A stretch of 64,000 bases of DNA from Obrimoposthia wandeli (taxonomy: Eukaryota), in NCBI GenBank assembly GCA_977020255.1, contig CDROCS010005043.1:1-64000 (forward strand), in the 5' to 3' direction. Made by a program: the position numbers and the translations under genes. The notes under the pieces are model-generated. The model saw only the letters and a list, made by a program, of their open reading frames with translations, had not been told where the DNA came from and did no database searches. The first letter of the stretch is position 1, and the number at the start of each line of letters is the position of its first letter. This document shows, piece after piece, positions 1,224-60,099 of the stretch.

Positions 1224-1228
1224 TACAC

Positions 1229-17549: not shown

Positions 17550-19094
17550 ATCAAGTCACTGATTCATAAAATAAGTGCGCTACTTACTGGCGCACTTAGC
17601 GTCTTTGCTTTTGCGCCGTTTGATTACACCATCAGCTTATACATTTCATTATTTTCTCTGCTTTTTATTCTTGATAATAAATCGGCCAAGCACGCGGCTG
17701 GATACGGTTTTCTGTGGGGGCTCGGGTTCTTCATTGCCGGTATTCACTGGATTTCAGTCAGTATCTTAGACTTTGGTGGATTGCCGCTCTCTGTGGCAGC
17801 ATTACTCGTGGTATTACTCTGCGCCTATCTAGCTATTTACCCTGCACTTTGTGCCTACCTACTTAATCGTTTTACCTCAGACTCGGCGTTACTGCGTTAC
17901 TTTGTTGCTTTCCCTGCTATCTGGTTAATCACAGATTGGTTACGCGGTTGGGTAATGACTGGCTTTCCGTGGTTACAGTTTGGTTATAGTCAAATGGATA
18001 CGCCACTGGTTAGCTTTGCGCCAATACTCGGTGTTGAAGGTGTTACAGCCGCAGTTTGCCTGATTACCGCCAGCTTGTATTACGCTTATCGTGAACGAAA
18101 AGCCGTCTTACCAGCCATTGTGATCACAGCAATCGTGTTGTCAGCCATATCGTTAAAAGGTTTAGAATGGACAGCGGCAGAAGCCGTTAAATCGATCGCT
18201 TTAGTGCAAGGCAATACCAATCAAGATGAGAAGTGGCTGCCAGAAAAACAAGCAGATATTCTCAATGAATACTTAGAACTCAGTTTAGAGAATACCGATG
18301 CTGATATTATCATCTGGCCAGAATCTGCTATTCCAGCATTAGAATTCCAAGTGAAAAATTATTTGGATTATGTCAGTGAATTAATGCGCGAGAGCAATAC
18401 CACCCTTATCAGCGGCATTATTAATTACCAACGTGTCGACGATATCGATGAATATTACAATGCTGTGATCGTACTTGGCCAGCCAGAACAAGCTGCTAAT
18501 CACTCACCGGTGAATGACCGTTATTATAAAAACAAACTATTACCGATTGGTGAGTTTGTCCCCTTTGAAGATCTGCTCAGACCGATTGCACCATTATTTA
18601 ACTTACCTATGTCATCATTTCAACGTGGTGGTGAAGCACAGTTAAACTTAGCCGCGAGCAACGTCCATATTGCCACGGCAATATGCTACGAGATAGCCTT
18701 TAACCAAACCTTAGTGAACACGGTAAAGCCAGATACCGGCTTTATTTTAACGGTAAGTAACGATGCTTGGTTTGGTACTTCAATCGGTCCTGATCAGCAT
18801 TTAGAGATCGCGAGAATGCGGGCGTTTGAATTCCAACGTCCGGTACTCCGTAGTACCAATACCGGCATTACCGCAATTTATGATGCTCAAGGTCAAGAGG
18901 CGGGCCGTATTCCACAATTCGAAAAAGCTGTATTACGTGCCGATGTCACGCCATATCAAGGCACAACACCCTTTAACCGTTATGGTCATACACCATTATT
19001 GATACTGGCAATGCTGTTATTCGCTGGTGTAGTCAGTCATCATTTATTCAGCCATAAAGTCAAAAATGAGAACCCACTTAAAACCTCGTTATAA
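17550..19094 (+). CDS. lnt: Apolipoprotein N-acyltransferase; true N-terminus lies well upstream of the ORF-track start (17781)
   Basis: GFPW...GYSQ, WPESAIP, K.KLLPIGEFVP, ICYEIAF, SNDAWFG, RSTNTGIT. The frame is open back to 17529 and encodes the expected FAFAPFD...GFLWGLGFFIAGIHWISVS. AAAGGA lies 7 nt before ATC at 17550. Confidence 0.9.
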   Translation: MKSLIHKISALLTGALSVFAFAPFDYTISLYISLFSLLFILDNKSAKHAAGYGFLWGLGFFIAGIHWISVSILDFGGLPLSVAALLVVLLCAYLAIYPALCAYLLNRFTSDSALLRYFVAFPAIWLITDWLRGWVMTGFPWLQFGYSQMDTPLVSFAPILGVEGVTAAVCLITASLYYAYRERKAVLPAIVITAIVLSAISLKGLEWTAAEAVKSIALVQGNTNQDEKWLPEKQADILNEYLELSLENTDADIIIWPESAIPALEFQVKNYLDYVSELMRESNTTLISGIINYQRVDDIDEYYNAVIVLGQPEQAANHSPVNDRYYKNKLLPIGEFVPFEDLLRPIAPLFNLPMSSFQRGGEAQLNLAASNVHIATAICYEIAFNQTLVNTVKPDTGFILTVSNDAWFGTSIGPDQHLEIARMRAFEFQRPVLRSTNTGITAIYDAQGQEAGRIPQFEKAVLRADVTPYQGTTPFNRYGHTPLLILAMLLFAGVVSHHLFSHKVKNENPLKTSL

Positions 19095-23084: not shown

Positions 23085-26000
23085 TTATTTTTGTTTTTTG
23101 AGCGTCACTTGCTGTGGTATACCAAAATAGCTTACAAATGTTAAAGAAGTATTATCACCAGATACACTCACTTTAACCTTATCGTTATCGGCAATCACAT
23201 CCCAGCGGCCTTGAATAACAACGGGAATATCCATTGGTATCGCCGCTGTATAACGCGTCATATTCAAGTCCGGAGTCACACCACTAATATTAATAGTGTC
23301 TTCACTCACTTGTCGTGTCATGACAATCGATGGTTTTGACATACTCACAACTAAACCATCGCTAAAGCTAGTGCCTGAAAAAGCACTATACGCGGTCGTT
23401 TTAGTTTCTATATCATAAACAACATGGGCATTATCGTCTTTTTGCAGTACTTGATAAGGCTTGTTACCCGCGGTAGTTTCAGCTGCAATACGTGCCATCG
23501 ATTCCGGCGTCGCATCAAGTATGGTTAAATACTCATACTCAGCATCATCAGGGGCATCCCCATGATTTAACCAAGCAACAGTAAAGTCGCCCTCTGTTGG
23601 TTTTTTACTTTGATTATGTGCTGATTTTTGATGCTGACGGCGTACTTCAAGTTCACCATCACTGACTAACACATAGCCATTACCTTGGCCGTCAATGAGC
23701 CAGTCACCTTTCGCTAATGTCGCAGTATAAGGAAAGGCGTCAATTTCTGTGCCATTCACCCATATACTATTCGACTTAGCTGTGTTCGCATGTTGGAACA
23801 ATGTCGTTTCAGTATTAAAACCATCACTACTGCTCTCGATATTGCTACCCAACATCACCAAACGGTTGTTCACCGAGAAGGTTGTTTTAAGCATTGAGAA
23901 ACCACTATCAAATTTTGCCGTAGATGGTGCTTGATGCTTAAACGCAAACATACCATATTGACCATCCAAACTTGATGCACCACTAAATGCTTGGTTACCA
24001 CGTAACATCAAGGTATGCGAATTTGGACTATCAAGTTGCTCTAGCGGTAAATGAATCGTCGTGGCTCCAGGGTTACGATTCCAATCCCAACCCGCTTCAA
24101 CAAAACCAACATCAGCTTGCTTTCCATAAGGCACAATCTGTACTGCACCGTGACTTTGATAGCGACCATAACGGTTATCACGATGATAGATCTCTGACGA
24201 CCAAACATTACTATTATACGCCTTCATCGTCACCATTTTGTCCTGATAACGGTGAATACCAAACGCACCACCATTAAACGCCCAATAACCTTGTGGGAGG
24301 CTTTCTGGTTCAACCCGTTCGCCAAATAATGCCACCGACTGGTCTGCCGTTTTACCTGTGATTTGTAAATATGCAGCAGCAAGTTCATGATCGACATCAC
24401 CATCACCAGACAAATCACCTGAAAGTGCTAACCAACGAAATGAATCTTGGAATGACGCTAATTTAGGTGGATTTAATGGGTGGCGTCCAGATAAGCCGAT
24501 ACCGACTTCAGGATTACTATATACCCAAGCTGATAACATCGCTTTTTTCAACGCTTTGCGACCCGTTTCACCGACTGCATACGGGGTACCACTGAGCATA
24601 TAAACCAGTTGAGCAGCATTTTTGAAAGCAGGAAATGAATAACCCGGATAGTTACCTTCATGACGCCACGCAGTACCATCTGGTCGTAAACCATCATAAC
24701 CACCAGGTGGTGTTTGCGACAATGCGATATCAATGTAATGACCAAATTTTTGCAATAAAGCAACTCGACGATTAATATCAGGTTCGAGCATTAACAATGC
24801 GAGATGTTGTCGTGACAAGGTATTGAAATAATCTAAGTTAGAACTTTCAAGTCCCGGTACCATATCAAAATTATCTTTAAATTCACGTGAATACCATAAT
24901 AAGGCATCATAAACAGGCTTACGTAAATCATGCTGAGTTAACACATCAGACATTAACATCGCTGAAATATACCACCAACGACCATAGTAACCCCAGTGGT
25001 GTGTCGTCACCAATGAACTGCCATCAACGAATCCCTGGTCTAGGATATGTTGTGTCATTAACACATACATATCTTCCAGCTCTTGTTTAATAATAGGGTC
25101 GTTCGTATTGTTCCATGCTCTACTGATATTTAGCAATAATGTAGAATATTTTCCTTGCGATACATAATCATCAATCAATTTTTTATCTGCGGGCTTTAAA
25201 TGCTCAGGCTGATAAATAACACGCTGTTTATTATTGATCAGATGACGGCCAGAAAGATTACCGTCACTGTCACGTTTGATTTCAAGAGCAGTGAATTCAG
25301 CGCGTAACGCATCTAAATCGGTATTTATTTTCAACCCTGTTTCACCCGCTATGTTAGTAAATACATTAACCAGTGAATTACGTACCAAGTTAGCAGTTGC
25401 AATTTCTTCAGCTGTTGCAACTGGAACAATTTTAGATAAGTTAAAATCAATTTCAGGGATTGTATAACGGGTTTTAACTTGATCATCAGACCATTGATAA
25501 CGAGAATCATCAACTGACAACATCACTCGATCTATATAAAAAGTACCATCTTCAGCATTGCGAGGGGCAGTAAAACGGATAGTATCCATATCACTGCGGA
25601 CACTACCAAAAATACTACTACTACCTAAGCCTTCGCCATCTTTATTGTCAGTCGGCGCGATACCTTCGACTTCTCGGCCTTGAATGTCATTCGCTAAAGA
25701 AACACCAACGGCTCGCCAACCGGTAAAATTCATATTGACACTAAAACCAGCATCAGCATCAGCGGTTCCAGTCAATCCACGACCTAAGTCAACCACAACA
25801 TCATCATCAACAGCGACTTCATTGTAAATCCAAAATGATAATACTTGCGTGCCTCGACGTCCCCAAGTCTTTTTCGCTTGGGCGTCAGTAATTAGCTTGA
25901 TCGGTTGATTGATAACAAAAGCACTGCTCTTTGTCCAATCCCATTGCAGAGAATGTCTGCCCATGATGTAACGCTTGTCACTCATCTGTAAAGTAGAGCC

Positions 26001-26186
26001 TTGTCGAGCAACAATATTATCAGGTACTTTGTCTTCTGACAGTGGAATAATGAGCGATTCCATGACAGGTGCGATAACGTTTTTTTCTTCCACCGCTTGC
26101 ACTTTATTCATATCAGCACAAGCTGTGAGCCCAAGTGCGGTAACGATACATAAAGATATCTTTTTTAATTTCATTGAAGTATGCAT
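23085..26186 (-). CDS. Chondroitin sulfate ABC lyase, cABC-I-like (PL8), lipoprotein
   Basis: Lipobox LTAC. THHWGY, GLRPDGTAWRHEGNYPGYSFPAFKNA (catalytic His/Tyr), SGRHP, WSSEIY.RDNRYGRYQSHG and GWDWNRNPG match Proteus-type cABC I motifs. Confidence 0.93.
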   Translation of the reverse strand: MHTSMKLKKISLCIVTALGLTACADMNKVQAVEEKNVIAPVMESLIIPLSEDKVPDNIVARQGSTLQMSDKRYIMGRHSLQWDWTKSSAFVINQPIKLITDAQAKKTWGRRGTQVLSFWIYNEVAVDDDVVVDLGRGLTGTADADAGFSVNMNFTGWRAVGVSLANDIQGREVEGIAPTDNKDGEGLGSSSIFGSVRSDMDTIRFTAPRNAEDGTFYIDRVMLSVDDSRYQWSDDQVKTRYTIPEIDFNLSKIVPVATAEEIATANLVRNSLVNVFTNIAGETGLKINTDLDALRAEFTALEIKRDSDGNLSGRHLINNKQRVIYQPEHLKPADKKLIDDYVSQGKYSTLLLNISRAWNNTNDPIIKQELEDMYVLMTQHILDQGFVDGSSLVTTHHWGYYGRWWYISAMLMSDVLTQHDLRKPVYDALLWYSREFKDNFDMVPGLESSNLDYFNTLSRQHLALLMLEPDINRRVALLQKFGHYIDIALSQTPPGGYDGLRPDGTAWRHEGNYPGYSFPAFKNAAQLVYMLSGTPYAVGETGRKALKKAMLSAWVYSNPEVGIGLSGRHPLNPPKLASFQDSFRWLALSGDLSGDGDVDHELAAAYLQITGKTADQSVALFGERVEPESLPQGYWAFNGGAFGIHRYQDKMVTMKAYNSNVWSSEIYHRDNRYGRYQSHGAVQIVPYGKQADVGFVEAGWDWNRNPGATTIHLPLEQLDSPNSHTLMLRGNQAFSGASSLDGQYGMFAFKHQAPSTAKFDSGFSMLKTTFSVNNRLVMLGSNIESSSDGFNTETTLFQHANTAKSNSIWVNGTEIDAFPYTATLAKGDWLIDGQGNGYVLVSDGELEVRRQHQKSAHNQSKKPTEGDFTVAWLNHGDAPDDAEYEYLTILDATPESMARIAAETTAGNKPYQVLQKDDNAHVVYDIETKTTAYSAFSGTSFSDGLVVSMSKPSIVMTRQVSEDTINISGVTPDLNMTRYTAAIPMDIPVVIQGRWDVIADNDKVKVSVSGDNTSLTFVSYFGIPQQVTLKKQK

Positions 26187-26212
26187 GAAATAACCTTACA
26201 ACTATGAGAGAA

Positions 26213-26234
26213 GCTTATGGGCTAACCCATAAGC
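26213..26234. other. Intercistronic 9-bp hairpin between autotransporter and lyase genes
   Basis: gcttatggg-ctaa-cccataagc, with only a weak U tail on the minus strand. Confidence 0.7.
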
Positions 26235-26241
26235 AGCTAAT

Positions 26242-28341
26242 TTAGAAACGTTTAGTAGTAGAAATACCAGCAACCAATTCAGTATATTTATCACGCTGGT
26301 AATAATTTAAACCAGCAGAAATACTAAAGTCATTTTCCATTTTAAAATGACCATTTAATTTAGCTTCTAATACATCACCGCCAACTTGATCACCAGAGAT
26401 CACAAAACGATCCCCAGAAGTATCCATCTTCAGAGTTGCACTTTCACGGAACACTTGATCTGAGTTTAAGTCTTTATAACCCATCACAGAGAATGATGGT
26501 GTAAATTGACTGTTTTCCATTTGAAAAGTGGTGAATATGTTGTAGCCAATGCCAACTTGTTTTGTACTGTAAGTTTGACGGTCATATCGTAAGCTAGCAG
26601 GAGAGCCTTGCTCTTCATAATCAGCACTGCGGATCCACTGATAATTATAAGCAATACGAGGTTCAAATTGCACAGATTCCAGATCAAATTTCATCCCTGC
26701 CATCAATTGATAGCCTAACTGAAATGAACTGTATTCAGCCTTTGCATGAGTATCGCCTTCATAACCTGAACGATTACCAATAACTCTTTCGCTGGTATTA
26801 TCATTACGACCAATATTAACATTGCCATCAATAAAGTAACGTTGATCAAACCAGCCGCTATAAATCATCCCTTGAAAACTATCAACTTCATTACTGCTGT
26901 TATTATTGTTAATATCAGCGCTCGAATTAGCATAAGCTAATGAAGCGCCAAACAAGCGTTGTTTATCAAAAACGCGGTCAAAACCAACGTTAATACCATA
27001 GGTACTCAAAGAATAACCGTTCACAGATGCTGAATCAGCTTGCCTACCGCTACTGTATAGCGCATGGCTCCAGATATTCCAGCCATTATTTGCAGTTCCC
27101 AACGCACTTTGATTACGTAAAATATTAGTACGCTCATCAACTTGACCACGCATTTTATCGACGAGCATAAGCGCAGCACGTAGTTCACTTCCTTCTGCAT
27201 CAGGTGTGATGTCATCTGCTAGTTGAGCTGTTTTTATCGCGTCATTACCCGACGATGTTAATAAAGCCAATAACTCAGCAGAAGCATCTGAACCGGTTTT
27301 ATTATGTGTATTAAGCGCATAATTCACCATGTGGTTAGCGGTCGCTACTTCATTGTTATTAGCACCACCAGCAGCAGCTAAACTAACAAATTGATCACCA
27401 CCTTGATAATTAACCGCGTAACGTACAATTAATTGATTACCCGACACACCGCCGTTAAGTGCTGGAGGTGTTTTCTCTAACCATGAACTCTGCACCGCTA
27501 ATAGTGGTGACATAGTCAGGTTTGATTTTGCCGCAGGTTTATCTCCCTCAATAACAATACCGGATCCGCCTTTTATGCCACCATCAGATTTCAGTAACAC
27601 AATATCTTTACCTAAAATATCATTTACACTGCTACCTTTATAAGAGAATTTCACCTTGTTATTAACGAACTCTGTTTTTCCTTCAACCTGTAAAATAGGT
27701 GCATCTAAATTACTCGTATCACCGACATTGAAGGTCAAGGTTGAACCCGCTTTATTACCAAAGTCCCCTCCCCAAACAATCGTATTAGCCTGACTAATAA
27801 TCGTTAAATTACCATAGTTATTAATGGTGCCAATACCGGTAATAGCGCCTCCATCAAAGATCGCATCTTTACCACTACTACCGTTATAGCCAAAATTTAT
27901 TTTATTACCTGTTACACCATTACCAATAATGCTGCCATCAATTGTGCCGTCAACATCGATACGTAATGAAGACGAGCTCGTACTAAAGTCTATTGCGTTG
28001 ACAAGGCCACTTACCTTCGAACCAGCCTTAACGTAAATCCCTAAATTAGGACTTGCTGGATCACTTTGAATAAAGCGACCATCAATTTTGATACCAGTCC
28101 CGTTACTGCTGGTAATATCATAGCCATCGGTATAAATATTACCTTTAAGTACACCATCACTCGCAACATATATTGCATTCGCATTATCAGCCGTCACTGC
28201 AGCATCATTTTTTAACCACTGACTTCCGAACTCGCCACCTTTATAACTTAGTCCTTCTGCATTAACTAAGCTGGGTGTAAATAAATAGCTCACTACTAGT
28301 AGAGACAATAAACTCGGTTTAAACTTTGGCTTAATATACAT
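26242..28341 (-). CDS. Type Va autotransporter with a Gly/Asn/Ser-rich beta-helical passenger of unknown function
   Basis: Signal peptide ending VNA, AIDA-like passenger, linker helix, and C-terminal barrel (WNIWSHALY...G.SL.TYG...GFD...FEPRIAY...), ending in Phe. Confidence 0.85.
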   Translation of the reverse strand: MYIKPKFKPSLLSLLVVSYLFTPSLVNAEGLSYKGGEFGSQWLKNDAAVTADNANAIYVASDGVLKGNIYTDGYDITSSNGTGIKIDGRFIQSDPASPNLGIYVKAGSKVSGLVNAIDFSTSSSSLRIDVDGTIDGSIIGNGVTGNKINFGYNGSSGKDAIFDGGAITGIGTINNYGNLTIISQANTIVWGGDFGNKAGSTLTFNVGDTSNLDAPILQVEGKTEFVNNKVKFSYKGSSVNDILGKDIVLLKSDGGIKGGSGIVIEGDKPAAKSNLTMSPLLAVQSSWLEKTPPALNGGVSGNQLIVRYAVNYQGGDQFVSLAAAGGANNNEVATANHMVNYALNTHNKTGSDASAELLALLTSSGNDAIKTAQLADDITPDAEGSELRAALMLVDKMRGQVDERTNILRNQSALGTANNGWNIWSHALYSSGRQADSASVNGYSLSTYGINVGFDRVFDKQRLFGASLAYANSSADINNNNSSNEVDSFQGMIYSGWFDQRYFIDGNVNIGRNDNTSERVIGNRSGYEGDTHAKAEYSSFQLGYQLMAGMKFDLESVQFEPRIAYNYQWIRSADYEEQGSPASLRYDRQTYSTKQVGIGYNIFTTFQMENSQFTPSFSVMGYKDLNSDQVFRESATLKMDTSGDRFVISGDQVGGDVLEAKLNGHFKMENDFSISAGLNYYQRDKYTELVAGISTTKRF

Positions 28342-28389
28342 AATTATCACTCTCAGAAATAAATTCAGATCAACTCACACAACACTGAC

Positions 28390-29322
28390 TTAAAATACCG
28401 TACTAACACCAAACGAAAGATACTTCACTTGGCCATCCGCTTTACCTAAATTAAAGCCATCTTGGTATTTGGTATCTTCTATATAGTACTCAGCGCTTAT
28501 TTTAAAACTATCCGTGATCGGATAAGAAAGCTGCAATGCATAACGATAAGTTTTACTGTTAGTATGATCCTCATCATGATAAGCACTGTCATACCAAGCG
28601 TAAGCCTTAGAATAACCGATAGGTAAGCGGAAATAAGGAGACACAGTTATGCCAAAAGGTGCTTTCCAATAATAATAAATGCGAGCCTGTTGGCCTGATT
28701 TATCATCTGATAAGCCCCAAGTATCACCTTTATCACTTTTTAGTCCGGAATTATAATACGTCATGGTGAGTCGAGATCCGTTAGCGAAATAATAACGAGG
28801 TCCTGATTCAAATTCCCAGCTTAAATAATCACTATCCATGGTTGGTTTAACATTATCCGCCGTATGACTGGCTTGGGTATTTAGGCCAAATTGTACTTCG
28901 CCCCACACGCCCCATTGATCATTAAATGAATATATATAAGCCGTCTCACTGCTATATAGATTAACGATCAAGCGAGAACCACTGTCATAAATCGTGCTAT
29001 CTTTTTGTAAATTGATACTCGGTTGGATCCAACCACCATCGAATCGAAAGCGGTACGACATTTCCATACTCGCTTGGGTATATCTTTGTTTGGAATCATG
29101 TTTACGATCACGATAACCTAAACTGTAATACCAATTTGAACCATCAGGGTTGATCGTCATATCCAGTCTTGGACCTGAATAGTTATAGTCTGAACCATAA
29201 TTCCCAGATTCTTGACTCAATGAGACATTAATTTTTGCAGCATTTGCCTGTAAAGGTAATAGCAGGCTTAATAATCCAACTGACAATAGACTGCCAGATA
29301 CTTTAACAAAATCAGATTTCAT
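28390..29322 (-). CDS. OmpG-like monomeric porin
   Basis: Signal peptide (ANA), Tyr/Trp-rich amphipathic strands; C-terminal SPYFR...YALQLSY...SAEY...KYLSFGVSTVF resembles the OmpG C-terminus. Confidence 0.65.
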   Translation of the reverse strand: MKSDFVKVSGSLLSVGLLSLLLPLQANAAKINVSLSQESGNYGSDYNYSGPRLDMTINPDGSNWYYSLGYRDRKHDSKQRYTQASMEMSYRFRFDGGWIQPSINLQKDSTIYDSGSRLIVNLYSSETAYIYSFNDQWGVWGEVQFGLNTQASHTADNVKPTMDSDYLSWEFESGPRYYFANGSRLTMTYYNSGLKSDKGDTWGLSDDKSGQQARIYYYWKAPFGITVSPYFRLPIGYSKAYAWYDSAYHDEDHTNSKTYRYALQLSYPITDSFKISAEYYIEDTKYQDGFNLGKADGQVKYLSFGVSTVF

Positions 29323-29663
29323 AACTTTTTATGACTCCCTAACGTTAAACTCAATGTGATTGTATATATTTTATAAACGCAATTTTAACGATTTCTCACT
29401 AAAAGTTTGTGATCAACCACCAATTATCGAAAGCAAACAAAAGAAACAAAGTAAGTAAAAGAAAAAGTTCAAAAAATATTAACTAATATTTAAATAAGAT
29501 CTAAAACATCATAAACTACTGGTTAATAAAGAATAAGTCGATTTAAATCGCTAGATTAGTAAGCATTGTTAAATTTACTGATCAACACCATGTCACAAAA
29601 CAGTTAATAAAAAGTATAAATACATTGAAATACATTTCATTAAAGCTTTAAAATCTTCACATA

Positions 29664-29698
29664 GAAAGACAAAGAAAGAAAAGGAAAGCAAAGGAAAG
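29664..29698. promoter_or_regulatory. Four AgaR-type GAAAG boxes upstream of the Ig-like lipoprotein
   Basis: GAAAG at 29664, 29674, 29684 and 29694, an exact 10-bp period. Confidence 0.7.
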
Positions 29699-29772
29699 AT
29701 AGGTTTGATGTATTAGTTCTACTAACCGTCAAATATAATTCTCTTATAATGAAACTACCCTAGGCAGGAATC

Positions 29773-32265
29773 ATGAAAAAAAGCTTTAAGTATTGCGCCA
29801 TTGCAATCGCCATTAGCAGTGTTCTTACAGGCTGTAATGACGAAGACACCACGAATTCAAATAACAATAACGGAAATCCTTACGTTGTACCGATCGCTTC
29901 TGATATAAGTATCTCTGGTGATAGTTACGTGAATTCAACGCTAACAGGTGAATATAAATTTATTGATCCGAACTATTCACCACGTGCAGAAGGCGCAAGT
30001 GCTTATAGCTGGAAAGTAGATGATCTTGATGGCGATAGAACTAATGATGTTGCCATTACGGGTGCAAATGAGCGCACCTTATTACTAGCTGATAATCAAC
30101 TAGACCAGTCTGTATATTTGTGTGTCACACCTGAAGCAACAGGTAACACAAATACGACTGGTGAAACGAAATGTTCAACGGCGAAATTGGTTCAATCAGC
30201 AAACGGCTCTAAACCCTCAGCAACAAGTGCTGTTATCGATAACACAACTCCGACAGTTGGCGACACCTTGACGGGTAGTTATGACTATGCCGATGCTGAT
30301 AACGATCTAGAAAGCGGTTCAACTTTCCGCTGGAAAGCCAGCGCGAATGACATTACGGGTGCGACGAGCATTACTCACACACTGACTAATCAGCAAGAAG
30401 GGAAAGTCATTGAGTTTTGTGTCACACCAACGTCTGCCAACCCAGATAGCATTTCTAATTACCCAACAATTGGCGATGAAGTGTGCTCTGCTGTTGATAC
30501 AGATGCAGTACAGGAAAAAGTAGGTGATGCGCCGACAGCAAATAATATTGTGATCACTGGTGATCACACGGTAGGCTCAACACTGACTCCAACCTACGCT
30601 TTCAGTGATGCTGATAATGATGCACAAGGCAGCAGTACCTTTAGCTGGAAACGCGGTTCAATCGAAGTAGCAACAACATTAGCTTATGAATTAGTAAGCG
30701 CGGATGTTGGTGCGAATATTACCTTTACTGTGACGCCCGTTTCAGCGACAGGGCTACCAACAAATGGTACACCTGTAGAATCTGGCGCGATAACCGACGT
30801 CGCGCAACCTTCAGGTCCAACACCGACAATCTCTTTAAAGGCAGTAGATAAAGCCGGTAAAGCTTACCCTGAAATTAACGATACATTGACCGGTGGTTAC
30901 ACTTACACCCCGTCAATAACCAACTCAGCAGATGAATCTACCGCGGTATGGAAAGCAGCAGGTGTACCGATCACCGATGTCACTTGTACTACCGGTTCCG
31001 ATTGTTCTTTAACGCTCACTGACACTTATTACAATAAAGACTTAACGTATTGTGTGACGCCGAAAGCAGTTGATAGCTCTGCAGGTACTGAGAAATGTAG
31101 CGCCATCGAAAAAGTCTATGGTGTAAAACTCTCTGGCACACTCGAGTTTGGTAAAGAGTTAAAACTAGACATATCGGGTTATAACAATCCAAAGGTTGAA
31201 TGGAAAGTCGACGTTAGTGATATTGAAGGCCCAACCAGTGATGATAATCGCACGCCGCGTAATCCAGTAAAAACCGGTGAAGCAGCAAAAACGTTCTTAA
31301 TTGGCGCTGAAGTATTGAAACAAATCATCAATACAGATCAAGCTAGTCTACTTGACTTAGATGCTACTATTGGTAACAAAAACGGGATTGTTGATGATGC
31401 CGATTGGGCACAAGCCTCTCTTTTAGGTAATGTCACTATGGACAGTGGTTCTGTTGATGCCAACGCCATTAATGCCGCGAACTACGTAGGTAAAGAAGTC
31501 GAAGTTACTGTCACATTTACTGAATCAAACGTAGATCCAGTTACCTTGATCGCGTCAAAAACAACTGAAGTACTCGGTGGCGTTTATTACGATACCAGTG
31601 ATGCAACCAAGCGTGGTATTGAGCCTGTAAGAGAATTAGTTTTCGGTACTCTGGTTTATCACCGTCCATTGACTGTGGCTGAAGCAACTCATAAAGCGGC
31701 TGTTGGTTTTGGTGCTAACGTAGCTTATCCGCGTTATTCAAAACCATCAGCAGGAATCAACTGGGGACTATATCGCGCAATAAAAGATGCATCAGATACT
31801 GCTGATAAGTACAACTCAGACTTCCCTGCGGTTGAATCTTGCTTGAATCTATATGATGAAGCGGCTAAGGATGTTTGGCATTTACCTGCAAGCCGTTATG
31901 ATTCAGCTTACACAGCAAACGGTTTTGCAGCCCAAGGCAATAAGCCACCAATGGAAACTGCCGATGAAAAGTATTCATTAATCCAATTGGCAAGCGCGAT
32001 CAACAAAAGTGATAACACAGTCAGAAATGGCTTACTCGGCACTTATATCGACCGTACAACGCCGAACGAGAAACTTAATTATACCATTTCACCGACGACT
32101 GGGTGGCTATTAAATGGCAATACTGGACTAACTGCTTTTTGGAGCGCTACGAAACCAAATTCAAGTTCATCGACAGCGAACTCGGTATTATTCACAGAAT
32201 CAGGTGGTTCAGGTAACAACGGTTTGACCAATGGCCGCTTTGTTTCATGTGTTAGAGCAAAATAA
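29773..32265 (+). CDS. Lipoprotein with four tandem Ig-like repeats and a C-terminal invasin/DUF823-like (C-type-lectin-like) domain
   Basis: Lipobox LTGC. Four ~95-aa repeats (VG.TLTG.Y...D...S...W...V/CTP...G...CS). The tip has YHRPLTVAE...W...C...WHLP...TGW...FWS...FVSCVR. Confidence 0.75.
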   Translation: MKKSFKYCAIAIAISSVLTGCNDEDTTNSNNNNGNPYVVPIASDISISGDSYVNSTLTGEYKFIDPNYSPRAEGASAYSWKVDDLDGDRTNDVAITGANERTLLLADNQLDQSVYLCVTPEATGNTNTTGETKCSTAKLVQSANGSKPSATSAVIDNTTPTVGDTLTGSYDYADADNDLESGSTFRWKASANDITGATSITHTLTNQQEGKVIEFCVTPTSANPDSISNYPTIGDEVCSAVDTDAVQEKVGDAPTANNIVITGDHTVGSTLTPTYAFSDADNDAQGSSTFSWKRGSIEVATTLAYELVSADVGANITFTVTPVSATGLPTNGTPVESGAITDVAQPSGPTPTISLKAVDKAGKAYPEINDTLTGGYTYTPSITNSADESTAVWKAAGVPITDVTCTTGSDCSLTLTDTYYNKDLTYCVTPKAVDSSAGTEKCSAIEKVYGVKLSGTLEFGKELKLDISGYNNPKVEWKVDVSDIEGPTSDDNRTPRNPVKTGEAAKTFLIGAEVLKQIINTDQASLLDLDATIGNKNGIVDDADWAQASLLGNVTMDSGSVDANAINAANYVGKEVEVTVTFTESNVDPVTLIASKTTEVLGGVYYDTSDATKRGIEPVRELVFGTLVYHRPLTVAEATHKAAVGFGANVAYPRYSKPSAGINWGLYRAIKDASDTADKYNSDFPAVESCLNLYDEAAKDVWHLPASRYDSAYTANGFAAQGNKPPMETADEKYSLIQLASAINKSDNTVRNGLLGTYIDRTTPNEKLNYTISPTTGWLLNGNTGLTAFWSATKPNSSSSTANSVLFTESGGSGNNGLTNGRFVSCVRAK

Positions 32266-32301: not shown

Positions 32302-32346
32302 AATCTCGTCATGACAAGTAACTCTTGTTAATGACGAGATTTTTTT
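32302..32346 (+). terminator. Terminator after the Ig-like lipoprotein
   Basis: aatctcgtcat...atgacgagatt stem plus T run. Confidence 0.8.
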
Positions 32347-32493
32347 AATCAAATATTCATAATTTATATCAAGATCTGATTAACAGACCTTGCACATGAG
32401 CCTGCTAACCAAATGAATATGCCTTGTAATTAGCGCTACCCCACGATTTCACTTAGTTACACCAAAGTATACTTCACGCCCCACCCCCTAAAA

Positions 32494-32548
32494 CAAAGCC
32501 AAACAAAGAAAAACAAAAGCGATCGAAACCACAAAATTAAAATCGAAG
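32494..32548. promoter_or_regulatory. Degenerate 10-bp-phased (C/G)AAAG boxes upstream of the beta-helix gene
   Basis: CAAAG 32494, CAAAG 32504, CAAAA 32514, CGAAA 32524, CGAAG 32544. Confidence 0.45.
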
Positions 32549-32700: not shown

Positions 32701-33825
32701 ATGAAACACATGAAAAAAGTAAAATCAATATTAGGACTTTCTCTTCTATATTTACCGCTTAGTGTGAGCGCTTCAGTCTGTGGTGTAGTAGGTGGGGGTT
32801 CAGTCCCTCTCACTATAGATCATGACACCGCAAAAACAGTGTCAATTACCACTTACACTGAATTACAAAGTGCGCTGTTAGCAGGGGAAAAACATATCTA
32901 CATTCCCGGCAACATCACAATTACGATCCCCAATAGCAAGAATGCGTTAATCATCCCTGAAGGGACAACTTTATTCAGTGACCGTGGAACGAATAATAGT
33001 CCAGGAGCTTTATTGCAAACCAACTACCTCAATGAGGCAGACAATTATTATGCCGTGATATCCATCGCGAGTAATGTCGAATTAAGTGGCTTAAGGATCC
33101 AAGGCCCAAATAGTAATATTGATACAGACAATCTGACCATTGGCATGCAGTCTGTCGCTGGCAGTAAAAATATCGCTATTACTAATAGTGAACTCTATGC
33201 TTGGCCTGGCGCTGCGTTATCACTAAAAACATCGTTGAATGCAGAAATTAGCTACAGCTATATTCATCACAACAGAAAATCATCACGTGGTTATGGTGTT
33301 GTCGTACAAAACGGTAGTACATCAGCAGCAATATACTGCAATGTATTTGATGCCAACCGTCATAGTATTGCTGGTTCAGGGCAGTCTGGAGAATCTTATA
33401 CCGCGTCTTACAACCTGGTACTGCCAGAAGGTAAAGGCCATGCGTTTGATATGCATGAAAGCTCCGACCCAGCAAGTAAGATAGGTGGTAGTTATGTCAA
33501 TATAAGTAACAACTGGTTAGATTTTGGCGGTACAAAGTGGGGGCATTATCCGTCGATAAATGTGCGTGGAATACCAGAAGTTGGCGCGGCAACGATTCAG
33601 AAAAATCATTTCACATCAGCAATACAATATCTTGATGGCGGAGCCAGAACGAAACGCCCAATTGAAGGCGTATCTGGCGCGATAGCTGCAGATAATACAT
33701 TAAAAAGTAACAATGAATTTGATGTTAATTTTAACTATGCCAATGATGGTCAACAGTGTTCTTTCAGTTATGGTTCGATGACACAGCAAGTTAATTGTAC
33801 AGCTGTAAGTTCAGTATTACCTTAA
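32701..33825 (+). CDS. Secreted right-handed beta-helix (pectin-lyase-fold) protein, function unknown
   Basis: Signal peptide. Repeats with Asn/Ile ladders (VELSGLRIQG, IAITNSEL, ISYSYIHHN, IYCNVF..NRHSIAG, HAFDMH, VNISNNW). Confidence 0.7.
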   Translation: MKHMKKVKSILGLSLLYLPLSVSASVCGVVGGGSVPLTIDHDTAKTVSITTYTELQSALLAGEKHIYIPGNITITIPNSKNALIIPEGTTLFSDRGTNNSPGALLQTNYLNEADNYYAVISIASNVELSGLRIQGPNSNIDTDNLTIGMQSVAGSKNIAITNSELYAWPGAALSLKTSLNAEISYSYIHHNRKSSRGYGVVVQNGSTSAAIYCNVFDANRHSIAGSGQSGESYTASYNLVLPEGKGHAFDMHESSDPASKIGGSYVNISNNWLDFGGTKWGHYPSINVRGIPEVGAATIQKNHFTSAIQYLDGGARTKRPIEGVSGAIAADNTLKSNNEFDVNFNYANDGQQCSFSYGSMTQQVNCTAVSSVLP

Positions 33826-34107
33826 TTTCCTTATCTAATATTGATTGTGTTCACGGCCTTGTGTTACGTTTTCAGCAAGGCCGATACAAAACTCAGCAAC
33901 TGATTCAAGATACTCAGCCCAAAATAGCATCAAATAAACGTGGCTTTGCAAGTCATCAGATAAAATGACAAACGCGGTCAGATTACTATATTTACGACCT
34001 GAAAAGGATAAAGTACTTCTATATATTATCGTAAACTAACCCCGTCATCGGCAGATATTACGTGTAATAACGAGGTAGAGCATGCATTTTAAATATTGCC
34101 AAAAAAT

Positions 34108-34887
34108 TTAATAATCAGTCACTAATTTAAACGAATAAGACGGTGTCCTTAATCCTTTCATATCAACCGTCACCATCAGCCCTTCCCCTTGTTTTACAAG
34201 CGAAACTCGTGACTCTGGATCATCCACATGAATTGTGTCTGATAGCAATGTATCCACGCCTCGATGCATAAAACGATTCAGCTTTTCCGTATCCATAAAA
34301 TCAACATCAGATGCGTGTAGTTTAAACTGAGCTTGCGTTTGCGCTTTGTCTTTCACTGCCACATTAATAGCCATGTTTCCCAATTGATGCTGAGTACTCA
34401 CCAGCAAGGGGGTTTCAGCACTAATATAACCAGCATTACTTGGTGCAATAAAATCTGCCACTAAAAAGTATCGACGGTTCTCAGCCACAGCACGCACTTT
34501 GGTATTGTTGGCTAACACGCGAACATCTGGTTTCGCTAAATAATGAGTCTGTAACGTGTTTGGCATATTAGGCAATAATAACGTATGTTCACCATCACCG
34601 CGCATCACCACAATTTCATCATCCGACAGAAAATAACTGGTATTATCATCACTGACTAACACGGCATTTTGCAACGAACTGAATGCCATATCGCCAAAGT
34701 TCGCCAAACCAAATGTCAGGCCTGGTAAAGGTTGCATATCAGTCACTTTAATTTTATCGGCTTGCTTGTAAACAATAAAATCATCACCTTGATACTGCCA
34801 GTCACTTGCTTGTGCTGTTACTACTGTGGTTGCTAATAGTGATGCACATAAAAGCGATAACAGGGCTGGTTTCGATGTCATCATCAT
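34108..34887 (-). CDS. Exported hypothetical protein
   Basis: Signal peptide (..TAQA), no family recognised; ATGA overlap with the upstream phosphoesterase stop. Confidence 0.8.
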   Translation of the reverse strand: MMMTSKPALLSLLCASLLATTVVTAQASDWQYQGDDFIVYKQADKIKVTDMQPLPGLTFGLANFGDMAFSSLQNAVLVSDDNTSYFLSDDEIVVMRGDGEHTLLLPNMPNTLQTHYLAKPDVRVLANNTKVRAVAENRRYFLVADFIAPSNAGYISAETPLLVSTQHQLGNMAINVAVKDKAQTQAQFKLHASDVDFMDTEKLNRFMHRGVDTLLSDTIHVDDPESRVSLVKQGEGLMVTVDMKGLRTPSYSFKLVTDY

Positions 34888-36110
34888 GAGGCTACTCCAT
34901 AGGTTAATTCGTCCAACATCTCGCCTTGATCGTTACTGATCTGAACGTGGATGTTTTGACTATCCGCTTGCACATAAATGCGTGTTGCGGTGCCCGCTTT
35001 CGGACCACCACCCACAATCAACGGGAAACCGACATCTAGATTTTCATAAACATGGGTATGACCCGCTAACATCAAATCGACACCTGCCGCAGTTAGCACT
35101 TTCAACCAACGAGCCTGAAACGAACGACTAATTTCAGAAATCCATTGCGTTGGCACATGGTGCCAAATCGGGATGTGGCAACAAACAATACGAAACTGTG
35201 CATTTTTCCATTCAGGTGTTTGGATCACGGTTTTGATCCACTCTAACTGCTGCTCACGATAGGCTTCAAAATCCGCCAAACCTTGGTAATCTTCCCAAAA
35301 GTCAGGTTTATCTTCCCCTGTATCTAACATTAAAAACTGTACTGGCCCCTGTTTGAAAGTGTAATAATTAACACCTTCTGTCGGGGTACTTAAATAACGC
35401 TGCATACTGCGGGCATGTGTACCGCGACACTCATGGTTACCGCGTAAAAAATGCAAGATAGAGTTTGGCTCAATACCAACAAATTGCTGATAAATAATGT
35501 CTCTCAGCTGGTTTTCACTTTTTGCTTCGGTAATAAGATCGCCATTCAACAAGGTAAAATCAGCAGGCTGTTGCTTGGCTTGTGCCACCAAACGTTTTAT
35601 CACCGGATTATTTTGGTGCAGATCATTAAATACATTAAACCTAACTTGCTCTGTATTCTGAACTGGCATATAAACCGCAGGCTCAGAGACGACACGGTGG
35701 CCAAGCTTAAATGGCCATTCATCATTTAAACAAGGGCGTCCTAAAAAGCGGTAATTAATCTTGCTAACACCGCTACCAATTGCAAGTCGGAATGTATGAC
35801 AAGTATTTAATGTATTCATCAATCCCATGACCGCAGGTTTATGCGCAGTAAAAAAACCACCATCAACAGCATATTCAAGCTCAACAGCGGCATTTATATT
35901 GGTGAAAATAATGAGGTCAATGAAACCTGATTCGGCATAAGTGATCGCAGGGTGAGTAACGAAGGCAAATGCTTCGACAGGTTGCATCGTATGCTGTTCT
36001 TCCGGTTGAGATTGTGCAGTCACTGTCGGTGAAAACAACGATACCCCGGTACCGATAGCAACGGATGCAACAGACACCCCCTTCATAAACTGCCTTTTAC
36101 TTTTATCCAT
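34884..36110 (-). CDS. Tat-type calcineurin-like metallophosphoesterase (purple-acid-phosphatase-like, with N-terminal FN3-like part)
   Basis: NDLH, NGD, RGNHE, HIP and GHTH motifs; N-terminal SKRQFMK Tat-like motif. Confidence 0.85.
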   Translation of the reverse strand: MDKSKRQFMKGVSVASVAIGTGVSLFSPTVTAQSQPEEQHTMQPVEAFAFVTHPAITYAESGFIDLIIFTNINAAVELEYAVDGGFFTAHKPAVMGLMNTLNTCHTFRLAIGSGVSKINYRFLGRPCLNDEWPFKLGHRVVSEPAVYMPVQNTEQVRFNVFNDLHQNNPVIKRLVAQAKQQPADFTLLNGDLITEAKSENQLRDIIYQQFVGIEPNSILHFLRGNHECRGTHARSMQRYLSTPTEGVNYYTFKQGPVQFLMLDTGEDKPDFWEDYQGLADFEAYREQQLEWIKTVIQTPEWKNAQFRIVCCHIPIWHHVPTQWISEISRSFQARWLKVLTAAGVDLMLAGHTHVYENLDVGFPLIVGGGPKAGTATRIYVQADSQNIHVQISNDQGEMLDELTYGVAS

Positions 36111-47209: not shown

Positions 47210-47986
47210 TCAATCTTCCTTTTCGACAATAATCACTTCAACTTTCATATCTCGAAGACCTTCTACGTACTCGTCCGGGATACCTGAATCAGTAACTAAT
47301 ATGTCAATTTTACCGAACTCGCGAATCATATGACAGCTACGTTTTCCAAACTTACTGGAATCGGCAACTGCAATCACTTGTTCAGAAATATCACACATCA
47401 AACGATTAAGACTTGCTTCTTGTTCGTTATGAGTAGTGATACCGGCACGCAAATCAAAACCATCGACCCCTAAAAACAACTTATCGAAACAGTAATTTTT
47501 AAGACCTTGTTCTGCTTGTGAACCACTAAAAGAAAGTGCATTCTTACGGAGAATACCCCCGGGCATCAACACTTCAATTCCAGGTGCTGATGCTAACTCC
47601 ATCGCTACATCCAGACCATTGGTCATAACCACTGCACTGCCAATTGATTTTAGGCTAGAGGCAATCTCTTTTGCAGTAGTTCCCGAATCTAGAATAACAG
47701 TGTCACCACTATTGATAAGTTTTGCTGCAGCTTGACCAATCCGAGTTTTAATGTCGGGGTTATGCCGACGTTTCTCATGAACAGTCAATTCTGCAACAAC
47801 CCCAATATTTGGAATCGCAGCACCATGTGATCGAACCACATAACCGCTACTTTCCAGAAAACTAAGGTCACTTCGAATCGTGACACTAGAGACATTAAAT
47901 AGTGCAGCAAGGTCTTCAACGCGGGCTTTACCGTCTCGGTTAACCACATTGATGATTTCCATGCGCCTTTCGACAGCACTTTTCAT
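47210..47986 (-). CDS. agaR: DeoR-family repressor AgaR
   Basis: ERR..II...G.A.V..LA..F.VS.VTIR.DL HTH, DSGTT, VMTNG, DSSKFG; directly upstream of kbaZ. Confidence 0.93.
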   Translation of the reverse strand: MKSAVERRMEIINVVNRDGKARVEDLAALFNVSSVTIRSDLSFLESSGYVVRSHGAAIPNIGVVAELTVHEKRRHNPDIKTRIGQAAAKLINSGDTVILDSGTTAKEIASSLKSIGSAVVMTNGLDVAMELASAPGIEVLMPGGILRKNALSFSGSQAEQGLKNYCFDKLFLGVDGFDLRAGITTHNEQEASLNRLMCDISEQVIAVADSSKFGKRSCHMIREFGKIDILVTDSGIPDEYVEGLRDMKVEVIIVEKED

Positions 47987-60087: not shown

Positions 60088-60099
60088 TAAGATAGATCA

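What the first reader, a model, noticed from the sequence alone, without database searches (positions are those of the whole stretch)
29773..32265. Barrel-less invasin-like lipoprotein (4 Ig repeats plus lectin-like tip): possible functional analogue of Bacteroides SGBP-B
Seen: LTGC lipobox, four Ig-like repeats with acidic loops (DADND twice, DLDGD), a possible Ca-binding loop (GNKNGIVDDAD), and a C-terminal domain with the RPL..AE / C...W.LP / GW...FWS / SCV pattern. Established: that pattern is typical of invasin/RatA DUF823-type tips, normally attached to an inverse-autotransporter barrel, and SGBP-B proteins are lipid-anchored Ig stalks with a distal glycan-binding domain. Inference: this is a lipid-anchored stalk that binds GAG or proteoglycan. 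It has the strongest AgaR-type array in the window (4 perfect boxes) and is divergent from the porin operon. How it reaches the surface is unknown.
Basis: partly seen in the sequence, partly recalled or inferred. Interest (0 to 1): 0.78.

Follow-up and report, generated by a model that had tools for sequence, protein, structure and literature searches.

The report
Lipid-anchored invasin-like stalk in chondroitin locus
This gene encodes a lipoprotein made of five immunoglobulin-like modules and an invasin/Lcl-type lectin-like tip; it almost always sits beside glycosaminoglycan lyases, an autotransporter and an outer-membrane barrel protein in marine Gammaproteobacteria, so it is probably their substrate-binding arm, though binding and surface exposure are untested.

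Summary
ORF 29773-32265 (+) encodes an 830-aa protein with a lipobox (LTGC, Cys21).

One correction: there are five A9-type Ig modules, not four. The fifth carries a ~65-aa insertion with an EF-hand-like loop.

The tip (residues 616-830) is an expanded C-type-lectin-like domain. Its best structural match is Yersinia InvE (Z 11.2), followed by Legionella Lcl-CTD, which binds chondroitin-4-sulphate. Sequence links to InvE_AD and Lcl_C are real but below Pfam thresholds. There is no inverse-autotransporter barrel.

The family is small: 34 representatives among 1.84 billion proteins. It was seen only in Moritella, Photobacterium, Vibrio and Psychromonas, and is unnamed.

In 11 of 12 distinct loci the gene lies next to or within about 5 kb of a GAG lyase (PL8 or DUF4955/PL29-like). 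A short autotransporter and a barrel protein usually accompany it.

Four perfect phased GAAAG boxes follow a promoter-like site. The same box type lies upstream of the window's agaR and in E. coli's agaR-kbaZ region.

GAG binding, surface exposure and the export route remain inferred. Verdict: a new variant of a known kind, of moderate to high interest.

The parts
29625..29654 (+). sigma-70-like promoter candidate (TTGAAA, 18-nt spacer, TAAAAT; 10 of 12 matches)
   Evidence: Consensus scan. This is a pattern match only. The number of such sites in the region is not above the shuffle expectation.
29664..29698 (+). AgaR-type operator candidate: four perfect GAAAG boxes with a 10-bp period (seven tandem NAAAG pentamers), starting 10 bp after the -10 hexamer
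   Evidence: It is the strongest such array in the window. The same box type lies upstream of the window's agaR (48099-48123) and in the E. coli agaR-kbaZ intergenic region. Arrays also lie upstream of homologues in L003 (four perfect boxes found by the pattern search; six on reading), L004, L006 and L005.
29773..29835 (+). Signal peptide with lipobox LTGC (residues 1-21; lipidated Cys21; residue +2 is Asn)
   Evidence: Cys21 is invariant in 22 of 22 members.
29836..29892 (+). Acidic, Asn-rich linker (residues 22-40), predicted disordered
   Evidence: pLDDT is below 50 for residues 1-29. An acidic cluster at positions +3 to +5 is conserved in the family.
29893..31113 (+). Four A9-type Ig modules (residues 41-145, 146-250, 251-347, 348-447), three with a conserved Cys pair; Ig3 has none in this protein, though most relatives keep it
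   Evidence: Pfam IG_AIR9, NCBIfam ZirU_fam below threshold, AlphaFold2 model, internal repeat alignment. Ig3 is 53% identical to the A9 module of an inverse autotransporter, P0038.
31114..31617 (+). Fifth, degenerate Ig module (residues 448-615) with a ~65-aa helical insertion
   Evidence: VIA match to the SCAB1 Ig domain 4dix, Z 8.4.
31369..31407 (+). EF-hand/dockerin-like loop followed by a helix (residues 533-545; N at loop position 3, N at 5, G at 6, V at 8, D at 9, D at 12; position 1 is Ile here but Asp in some relatives)
   Evidence: A helix at 542-550 follows in the model. Calcium binding is not tested.
31618..32262 (+). Expanded C-type-lectin-like tip (residues 616-830). The Cys pair C690/C826 is invariant. 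The region of about residues 692-800 is a long loop. R614, R620, H630 and R631 are invariant basic residues.
   Evidence: VIA: InvE 5n40 Z 11.2, Lcl-CTD 8q4e Z 7.5, and many C-type-lectin-like domains at Z 6-7. Foldseek, atlas, hhalign against tip domains of inverse autotransporters, charge and conservation analysis.
32302..32348 (+). Rho-independent terminator (16-bp stem with one bulge followed by a U run), which makes the gene monocistronic
   Evidence: free energy -20.8 kcal/mol, z-score -6.2.
23085..29322 (-). Divergent partner operon: barrel protein (28390-29322), autotransporter (26242-28350) and lipoprotein chondroitin ABC lyase (23085-26186)
   Evidence: Pfam. The lyase scores 1194 bits against P. 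vulgaris chondroitin ABC lyase I, 1hn0, and carries lipobox LTAC. The operon is co-conserved with the target.
47210..47986 (-). AgaR orthologue (DeoR family), the presumed regulator
   Evidence: Pfam. It is 48% identical to E. coli AgaR, E 2e-82.

Best explanation
The gene encodes an outer-membrane-anchored lipoprotein that is most likely exposed on the cell surface.

Architecture: an acidic stalk about 20 nm long, built from five A9-type Ig modules, carries an enlarged InvE/Lcl-type C-type-lectin-like domain at its end.

Proposed role: it is the non-catalytic, substrate-binding member of a conserved outer-membrane cassette. The cassette comprises a barrel protein, an autotransporter, a lipoprotein GAG lyase and this protein. 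The tip would hold chondroitin or dermatan sulphate, hyaluronan or proteoglycan at the cell surface. The lipid-anchored lyase would cut the substrate there, and the products would enter through the co-encoded barrel protein.

Regulation: transcription is monocistronic. It is probably repressed by AgaR through four phased GAAAG boxes just downstream of the promoter, and induced when GalNAc-derived products appear.

Shown here: the gene, the lipobox, the domain architecture, the fold of the tip, the synteny and the box array.

Inferred: the ligand, surface exposure, AgaR binding and cooperation with the neighbouring proteins.
For: Architecture and fold:
- establish the domains and the fold of the tip.
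- The tip belongs to the clan that includes Lcl-CTD. That domain binds sulphated GAGs, including chondroitin-4-sulphate (PMC11162425).
- The family profile retrieves true Lcl_C proteins at E 6.5e-6 to 2e-4 in a search of 1.84 billion proteins.

Synteny:
- A GAG lyase lies next to or within about 5 kb of the gene in 11 of 12 distinct loci from Moritella, Photobacterium, Vibrio, Psychromonas and unnamed sources.
- In two distant members the lyase belongs to a different family (DUF4955/PL29-like rather than PL8). The barrel protein, autotransporter, lyase and lipoprotein order is still kept.
- In most cassettes one lyase is itself a lipoprotein.

Regulation:
- The box array sits just after a promoter-like site.
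- The same boxes lie upstream of agaR in the window and in the E. coli agaR-kbaZ region.
- The window's regulator is 48% identical to E. coli AgaR.

Location:
- LolB and Lnt are encoded in the window, and residue +2 is Asn, so outer-membrane sorting is expected.
- Compared with the nearest Moritella genome, the target (63% amino-acid identity), the autotransporter (66%) and the barrel protein (68%) have diverged far more than GH88, KduD and KduI (96-98%). This is the pattern expected of exposed proteins.
- The stalk modules are strongly acidic (net charge -4 to -11 each). The tip is about neutral (+1) and has four invariant basic residues.
Against: - No binding, localisation or expression data exist. 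No RNA runs hold this sequence.
- C-type-lectin-like domains of intimin and invasin bind proteins, not glycans.
- The tip is only about neutral in charge, not basic like the GAG-binding surface of Lcl (PMC11162425).
- The window protein does not reach Pfam thresholds for InvE_AD or Lcl_C.
- No known lipoprotein surface-export device (Slam/DUF560) was found among the 46 window ORFs scanned.
- One distant member (P0065) sits next to an OmpA-like gene with no GAG genes in the 7 kb upstream.
- The promoter call is a consensus match, and such matches are not enriched in the region.
Confidence: 0.5

Rival explanations
1. It is a host or particle adhesin rather than a nutrient-capture protein. The tip would bind a protein ligand or a proteoglycan core on animal tissue or marine particles, as intimin and invasin tips do. 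The stalk would serve colonisation, and the gene would be co-regulated with the lyases because both act on extracellular matrix.
For: The closest structures are adhesins: InvE at Z 11.2, with intimin and invasin at about Z 6. The A9 modules are shared with an inverse-autotransporter adhesin. The protein has diverged quickly compared with the cytoplasmic enzymes.
Against: The tight, repeated placement inside catabolic cassettes with two different lyase families and the AgaR-type operator point to a role in substrate use. The two roles are not mutually exclusive.
Confidence: 0.2
2. It is a periplasm-facing outer-membrane lipoprotein. It would stay on the inner leaflet and either bind GAG oligosaccharides that have entered the periplasm, or act as a structural or assembly partner of the barrel protein, the autotransporter or the lyase.
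For: In Proteobacteria the default fate of a Lol-sorted lipoprotein is the inner leaflet. LolB is encoded in the window. No Slam is present in the locus. The protein is co-conserved with a barrel protein and an autotransporter.
Against: A stalk of five Ig modules with an adhesin-type tip is an extracellular design. Polymeric GAG cannot be expected to cross a porin, and the partner lyase is an endolyase that is itself lipid-anchored. The divergence pattern is that of exposed proteins.
Confidence: 0.2
3. The tip is an enzyme related to the formylglycine-generating-enzyme fold, not a binding domain.
For: VIA matches to FGE-fold proteins cover 128-157 residues (TvpA 2y3c Z 7.9, CarF Z 7.5, PvdO Z 7.0, EgtB Z 6.3).
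Against: These score lower than InvE and share only 8-13% identity. The domain has only two cysteines, which correspond to the conserved Cys pair of invasin-type tips. The locus already encodes an anaerobic sulfatase-maturating enzyme.
Confidence: 0.03

Closest known systems
Yersinia pseudotuberculosis InvE (PDB 5n40) and the intimin/invasin inverse-autotransporter family
   Same: Both have a tandem Ig-like stalk ending in a C-type-lectin-like adhesion domain. InvE is the best structural match (Z 11.2, rmsd 1.9 A, 22% identity). The tips share motifs (PL..AE, C...LP, GW...YWS, VxCVR). A9 modules occur in at least one inverse autotransporter, P0038.
   Different: This protein has no N-terminal IAT beta-barrel or LysM domain and is anchored by a lipid instead. 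Its Ig modules are A9 type, not Big_1 or BIg21. Its tip is about 90 residues longer, with a large loop region. It sits in a catabolic GAG locus, not a virulence locus.
Legionella pneumophila Lcl C-terminal domain (PDB 8q4e; Pfam Lcl_C/DUF1566)
   Same: Both have a C-type-lectin-like fold (Z 7.5, 19% identity). The family profile finds Lcl_C proteins. Lcl-CTD binds sulphated GAGs, including chondroitin-4-sulphate (PMC11162425). Both place a globular head on a long stalk.
   Different: The Lcl stalk is a collagen-like trimer and the protein is not lipidated. Lcl-CTD has no disulfide and a strongly basic surface. This tip has an invariant Cys pair and is about neutral in charge. Its oligomeric state is unknown.
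Bacteroidota surface glycan-binding proteins of the SusE/F (SGBP-B) kind, such as the one in the B. thetaiotaomicron CS/HA locus (from general knowledge)
   Same: Both are lipoproteins with an Ig-like stalk and a distal binding domain. Both are encoded in a substrate-regulated polysaccharide locus next to a surface lyase. The window also holds a BT3328-like lyase.
   Different: The window has no SusC/SusD pair. The phylum differs, and the tip is a lectin-like fold rather than a beta-sandwich CBM-like domain. No sequence relationship was seen. The resemblance is at most functional.
Leptospira LigA/LigB (from general knowledge)
   Same: These are lipobox-anchored adhesins built from tandem bacterial Ig-like domains that bind extracellular matrix.
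   Different: They use Big_2 domains, lack a lectin-like tip, come from spirochaetes and are not part of a catabolic locus.
Salmonella ZirU/ZirS family (NCBIfam NF040485)
   Same: The Ig modules are of the same A9 type (56 bits over residues 252-378).
   Different: The score is below the family cut-off (56 against 100). ZirU is a short exoprotein of an inverse-autotransporter-like system. It is not a lipoprotein and has no lectin-like tip.

Membership tests
Inverse autotransporters (intimin/invasin) | N-terminal IAT beta-barrel (PF11924), as stated for the family in PMC3008723 | tested here: not met
   Pfam found no barrel domain. The lipobox is followed by a 19-residue linker, and the first Ig module starts at residue 41. 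The control protein P0038 scores 325 bits for IAT_beta.
Inverse autotransporters (intimin/invasin) | Passenger made of tandem Ig-like domains | tested here: met
   There are five A9-type modules. The same module type occurs in the inverse autotransporter P0038, with 53% identity.
InvE_AD adhesion domain (PF05689) | Pfam HMM score above the gathering threshold (32 bits) | tested here: not met
   The window protein gives no hit even at E up to 10. Five of 22 relatives hit below threshold, the best at 21.5 bits and E 3.4e-4, over profile positions 75-135. P0065 scores 25 bits.
InvE_AD adhesion domain (PF05689) | C-type-lectin-like fold of InvE with its conserved Cys pair and motifs | tested here: met
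   5n40 matches at Z 11.2, rmsd 1.9 A over 121 residues and 22% identity. Foldseek gives probability 0.98. The top atlas clusters are BIg21 plus InvE_AD. hhalign between A3 and A5 gives 86.9%, E 4.1e-6, over the last 46 columns.
Lcl_C / DUF1566 (PF07603) | Pfam HMM score above the gathering threshold (34.9 bits) | tested here: not met
   The window protein gives no hit. Six of 22 relatives hit below threshold, the best at E 0.0026. In the other direction, the family profile finds true Lcl_C proteins at E 6.5e-6 to 2e-4.
Lcl_C / DUF1566 (PF07603) | Trimeric head with a basic GAG-binding surface (PMC11162425) | not testable with these tools
   Only sequence-level charge could be computed. The tip has net charge +1, with invariant R614, R620, H630 and R631. 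The oligomeric state is unknown.
Bacteroidota SGBP-B (SusE/F-like) | Encoded beside a SusC/SusD pair in a PUL | tested here: not met
   No TonB-dependent transporter or SusD family was found among the 46 window ORFs scanned.
Bacteroidota SGBP-B (SusE/F-like) | Surface-exposed lipoprotein that binds the locus's glycan | not testable with these tools
   The lipobox is present. Exposure and binding need experiments.
Bacterial lipoproteins sorted to the outer membrane by Lol | Lipobox [LVI][ASTVI][GAS]C after a signal peptide, and no Asp at +2 | tested here: met
   The lipobox is LTGC and residue +2 is Asn. Cys21 is invariant in 22 of 22 members, and only one relative has Asp at +2. LolB and Lnt are encoded in the window.
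AgaR regulon | An AgaR orthologue in the genome and phased CTTTC/GAAAG boxes at the promoter | tested here: met
   The regulator is 48% identical to E. coli AgaR. Four perfect boxes lie at 29664-29698. Boxes of the same kind, at 10-11-bp spacing, occur in the E. coli agaR-kbaZ region and upstream of the window's agaR.
AgaR regulon | AgaR binding and induction by GalNAc or chondroitin sulphate | not testable with these tools
   No RNA runs were found. EMSA and qRT-PCR are needed.
ZirU family (NF040485) | Score above the NCBIfam cut-off (100 bits) | tested here: not met
   The score is 56 bits and covers only the Ig modules.

The most novel reading that the evidence does not exclude
The protein is the glycan-capturing arm of an undescribed four-part outer-membrane GAG-harvesting device in marine Gammaproteobacteria. 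The device would comprise a small barrel protein, a short autotransporter, a lipoprotein lyase and this Ig-lectin lipoprotein. It would be a SusC/D-independent counterpart of the Bacteroidota surface complex. It would be built from inverse-autotransporter passenger modules re-anchored by a lipid. The co-conserved autotransporter or barrel protein would serve as the export route or docking site for the two lipoproteins.
Probability: 0.25. Interest if true: 0.8.

Novelty: new variant of a known kind. Interest (0 to 1): 0.6.

Why it matters
How Proteobacteria capture polymeric host glycans at the cell surface without SusC/D systems is poorly understood. A study of a Vibrio hyaluronan locus notes the absence of any SusD-like binding protein (PMC8222515).

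This small, unnamed family gives a concrete candidate. It is lipid-anchored, has an adhesin-type tip related to a proven GAG-binding domain, and is kept beside GAG lyases of two unrelated families.

It also shows that invasin-type passenger modules can be used without their barrel. That raises a testable question about how such a lipoprotein would cross the outer membrane.

The four-gene cassette is a defined unit for genetics and biochemistry in cold-marine bacteria, some of which live on fish tissue.

Tried and rejected
- Sequence search of the whole protein and of the tip profile against PDB gave nothing meaningful.
- hhalign of the tip profile against a single inverse-autotransporter tip gave only 15.8% probability. 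It needed a seven-sequence profile to reach 86.9%.
- The search for related loci with the 22-sequence alignment A2 failed because no stretch was conserved enough. A narrower alignment, A4, found five loci.
- An FGE-like enzyme was considered and rejected (see the rival explanations).
- A canonical calcium-dependent C-type lectin could not be checked. No EPN/QPD plus WND motifs are evident, and a conserved SGNN sits about 11 residues before the last Cys.
- A Slam-type exporter next door was rejected. The 309-aa barrel protein hits only OMP_b-brl, with a weak KdgM match and no DUF560.
- Homology between the autotransporter passenger and the target was tested and not found. The passenger has no Pfam or PDB match.
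- A second copy of the family in the window was sought and not found.
- Expression evidence: no RNA runs were found.
- The Leyn et al. 2012 paper on AgaR was not held. The E. coli agaR-kbaZ region was read directly instead.
- The window contains no N runs.
Full report
**1. The gene**

The ORF listing gives one 830-codon ORF at 29773-32265 on the plus strand. Its translation starts MKKSFKYCAIAIAISSVLTGC. This is a signal peptide ending in the lipobox L-T-G-C.

In an alignment of 22 family members, Cys21 is invariant and L18 and G20 are nearly so. Residue +2 is Asn. Only one relative has Asp there.

The window encodes LolB (3960-4568) and Lnt (17781-19094). The normal expectation is therefore sorting to the outer membrane.

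A purine-rich Shine-Dalgarno-like stretch lies at 29762-29769. A strong hairpin followed by a U run lies 37 bp after the stop codon (free energy -20.8 kcal/mol, z-score -6.2). The gene therefore looks monocistronic.

**2.

All quoted motifs are present:
- DADND occurs twice, and DLDGD once.
- GNKNGIVDDAD lies at residues 534-544.
- HRPLTVAE is present.
- C690 is followed by W702-H-L-P.
- GW...FWSAT and VSCVRAK are present.

Most of these positions are invariant across the family.

**3. Domain architecture**

Pfam finds only IG_AIR9, the A9 domain (E 7.6e-8). NCBIfam gives a sub-threshold ZirU_fam hit on the same modules (56 bits against a cut-off of 100).

An AlphaFold2 model of the whole protein, built with the family alignment, has mean pLDDT 86.6. 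It shows beta-sandwich modules at about residues 41-140, 149-245, 255-345 and 352-445.

A fifth module lies at residues 449-615. It is interrupted by a helical insertion at about residues 512-575. The fifth segment aligns with the other four on the same signature (G.TLTG.Y.F ... WK ... GK...VTP). There are therefore five Ig modules, not four.

The insertion carries the GNKNG loop. Counted as an EF-hand loop, it has N at position 3, N at 5, G at 6, V at 8, D at 9 and D at 12, and is followed by a helix. Position 1 is Ile here but Asp in some relatives, for example DSNGNGVIDDYDW. Calcium binding is plausible but untested.

**4. The tip**

A separate model of residues 445-830 has pLDDT 85.8 and pTM 0.87.

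Foldseek against PDB ranks Yersinia pseudotuberculosis InvE (5n40) first, with probability 0.98 and E 1.2e-3. The exhaustive VIA-align search also ranks it first, at Z 11.2, rmsd 1.9 A over 121 residues and 22% identity. This stands clear of the next rows.

The next rows for the tip are:
- FGE-fold proteins (Z 6.3-7.9)
- Bdellovibrio Bd2740 C-terminal domain (Z 7.8)
- Legionella Lcl C-terminal domain 8q4e (Z 7.5, 19% identity)
- dozens of animal C-type-lectin-like domains (Z 6-7)
- intimin (Z 6.0) and invasin (Z 5.9)

The atlas search puts BIg21 plus InvE_AD clusters first and also lists an Lcl_C cluster.

At the sequence level the window protein reaches no Pfam score for InvE_AD or Lcl_C. Five and six of the 22 relatives give sub-threshold hits to those two families, on the last ~60 residues.

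I built a seven-sequence profile of true inverse-autotransporter tips. hhalign between it and the family tip profile gives 86.9% probability and E 4.1e-6 over the last 46 columns.

An exhaustive profile search of 1.84 billion representatives found only 34 proteins at E up to 0.001. The weakest of these include true Lcl_C proteins.

The tip is thus a divergent member of the InvE_AD/Lcl_C lectin-like clan. It is about 90 residues longer than those domains. Most of the excess lies in a well-predicted loop region (about residues 692-800) that holds invariant W702, L704, P705 and Y713.

The invariant C690 and C826 correspond to the conserved Cys pair of the autotransporter tips.

**5. What it is not**

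No IAT beta-barrel is present. By the family's defining feature (PMC3008723) it is not an inverse autotransporter. Its Ig3 module is nevertheless 53% identical to the A9 module of one, P0038.

It is not a Bacteroidota SGBP-B. No SusC or SusD family appears among the 46 window ORFs scanned.

**6. Distribution**

The word-index search found full-length relatives only in Moritella, Photobacterium and Vibrio, at 31-65% identity. All are annotated as hypothetical.

A search restricted to the tip found only this same family.

A scan of one genome per species found five loci. They come from a Moritella MAG (two loci), P. lutimaris, P. nomapromontoriensis and a Psychromonas MAG.

I found no paper describing the protein.

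**7. Genomic context**

The window is a glycosaminoglycan utilisation region. The divergent operon upstream of the target holds:
- a 309-aa outer-membrane barrel protein (28390-29322)
- an autotransporter (26242-28350)
- a PL8 lyase (23085-26186), which scores 1194 bits against P. vulgaris chondroitin ABC lyase I and carries its own lipobox LTAC

Further along the window are:
- a BT3328-like/DUF4955 lyase
- GH88, KduD and KduI
- an AgaA-like deacetylase, a mannose-family PTS, AgaS, KbaZ and AgaR
- sulfatases and an anaerobic sulfatase-maturating enzyme
- a second PL8 lyase

Across loci:
- Five loci have the same divergent arrangement of barrel protein, autotransporter and lipoprotein PL8. These are the window, L003, L007, P. 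lutimaris and P. nomapromontoriensis.
- Three loci of a shorter clade (L005, L006, L011) end an autotransporter-PL8-PL8 run with the target homologue; L005 and L006 have an OprD porin gene upstream.
- In V. metschnikovii the gene follows an OprD porin gene, with two PL8 genes 5 kb away.
- The Psychromonas MAG has two tandem copies followed by PL8 and a PL29-like gene.
- Two distant members (P0071, P0073) end a run of barrel protein, autotransporter (391-404 aa) and a DUF4955 lyase. The cassette is therefore kept even where the lyase family differs.
- One distant 589-aa member (P0065) follows an OmpA-like gene with no GAG genes in the 7 kb upstream. Its contig ends just after the gene.

A GAG lyase is therefore next to or near the gene in 11 of 12 distinct loci. 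In most cassettes one lyase is itself a lipoprotein.

**8. Regulation**

GAAAG occurs four times with a 10-bp period at 29664-29698. This is the only array of four perfect boxes in the window. The next best has three perfect boxes and lies upstream of agaR.

The array begins 10 bp after a promoter-like TTGAAA-18-TAAAAT site. That is a position where a repressor would block transcription.

The window's DeoR-family regulator is 48% identical to E. coli AgaR. The E. coli agaR-kbaZ region holds CTTTC/GAAAG-type boxes at 10-11-bp spacing. AgaR is reported to repress that region and itself (PMC4694137, citing Ray and Larson 2004).

Arrays also precede homologues in L003 (four perfect boxes by pattern search; six read), L004 and L006 (two boxes each) and L005 (one imperfect pair). 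They are weaker in P. lutimaris.

AgaR control is therefore a well-founded inference, not a demonstrated fact.

**9. Location**

Nothing here shows surface exposure. Four observations favour it:
- The design is an adhesin-type stalk and tip.
- The substrate is a polymer, and the partner endolyase is also lipid-anchored.
- The stalk is acidic (net charge -4 to -11 per module) while the tip is about neutral with four invariant basic residues.
- The target (63% amino-acid identity), autotransporter (66%) and barrel protein (68%) have diverged far more than GH88, KduD and KduI (96-98%) compared with the nearest Moritella genome.

Known routes for surface lipoproteins are Slam, type II secretion, Bam-assisted threading and type V systems (PMC7857515). 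No Slam is in the locus. The conserved autotransporter and barrel protein are candidates only by association.

**10. Verdict**

The functional part (GAG binding at the surface, an SGBP-B-like role) is the best available reading, at about 50%. The main rivals are a colonisation adhesin and a periplasm-facing partner protein.

The family is small, unnamed and unstudied. I rate it a new variant of a known kind: an Ig stalk with a lectin-like tip, here lipid-anchored and embedded in a conserved GAG cassette.

Noticed in passing
window 36143-37897 (-): This DUF4955 protein matches the NCBIfam BT3328 family of hyaluronic acid endo-lyases (E 1.3e-93, 314.8 bits, model positions 318-836, below the equivalog cut-off). 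It therefore looks like a known PL29-type lyase rather than a new lyase family.
   Followed up: partly
window 61283-63996 (-): A third PL8 lyase gene is split into two ORFs (N part 62866-63996, C part 61283-62428) with a 437-bp gap between them. It aligns contiguously with an intact PL8 of a Moritella MAG at 78% nucleotide identity (L011 2280-4998). It may be a pseudogene.
   Followed up: partly
window 60090-61282 compared with L011 4998-13147: In the related Moritella MAG a second PL8 gene and a shorter paralogue of the target family lie between the PL8 at the window's edge and sulfatase2. In the window that block is absent, and a 306-aa phosphodiesterase-like gene lies there instead. tblastn found no second copy of the family in the window.
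   Followed up: partly
window 32701-36110 compared with L007: The beta-helix gene (32701-33825), the 259-aa ORF and the metallophosphoesterase gene are absent from the closest Moritella locus. There the target homologue is followed directly by the PL29-like lyase.
   Followed up: no
window 23085-32265 compared with L007: There is a trough of divergence centred on the three outer-membrane genes: autotransporter 66%, barrel protein 68% and target 63% amino-acid identity. The lyase is at 84% and the cytoplasmic GH88, KduD and KduI are at 96-98%. This suggests diversifying selection or allele replacement of exposed proteins.
   Followed up: partly
L013 3795-10109 and L014 3968-10265: Distant relatives sit in a run of barrel protein, short autotransporter (391-404 aa), DUF4955 lyase and Ig-lectin lipoprotein. 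The barrel proteins share an N-terminal motif (AAKV...Y...DYG.(S/D)Y(D/N/S)Y.G) with the window's 309-aa barrel protein. The passenger of the short autotransporters is only about 100 residues, and its role is unknown.
   Followed up: partly
L009 (Psychromonas MAG) 15-5703: Two tandem copies of the target family are present. One is 1007 aa long and has two extra A9 modules. They are followed by PL8 and PL29-like lyase genes.
   Followed up: no
window 32470-32530: Degenerate CAAAG/GAAAA phased boxes lie upstream of the beta-helix gene at 32701. This gene may belong to the same regulon.
   Followed up: no
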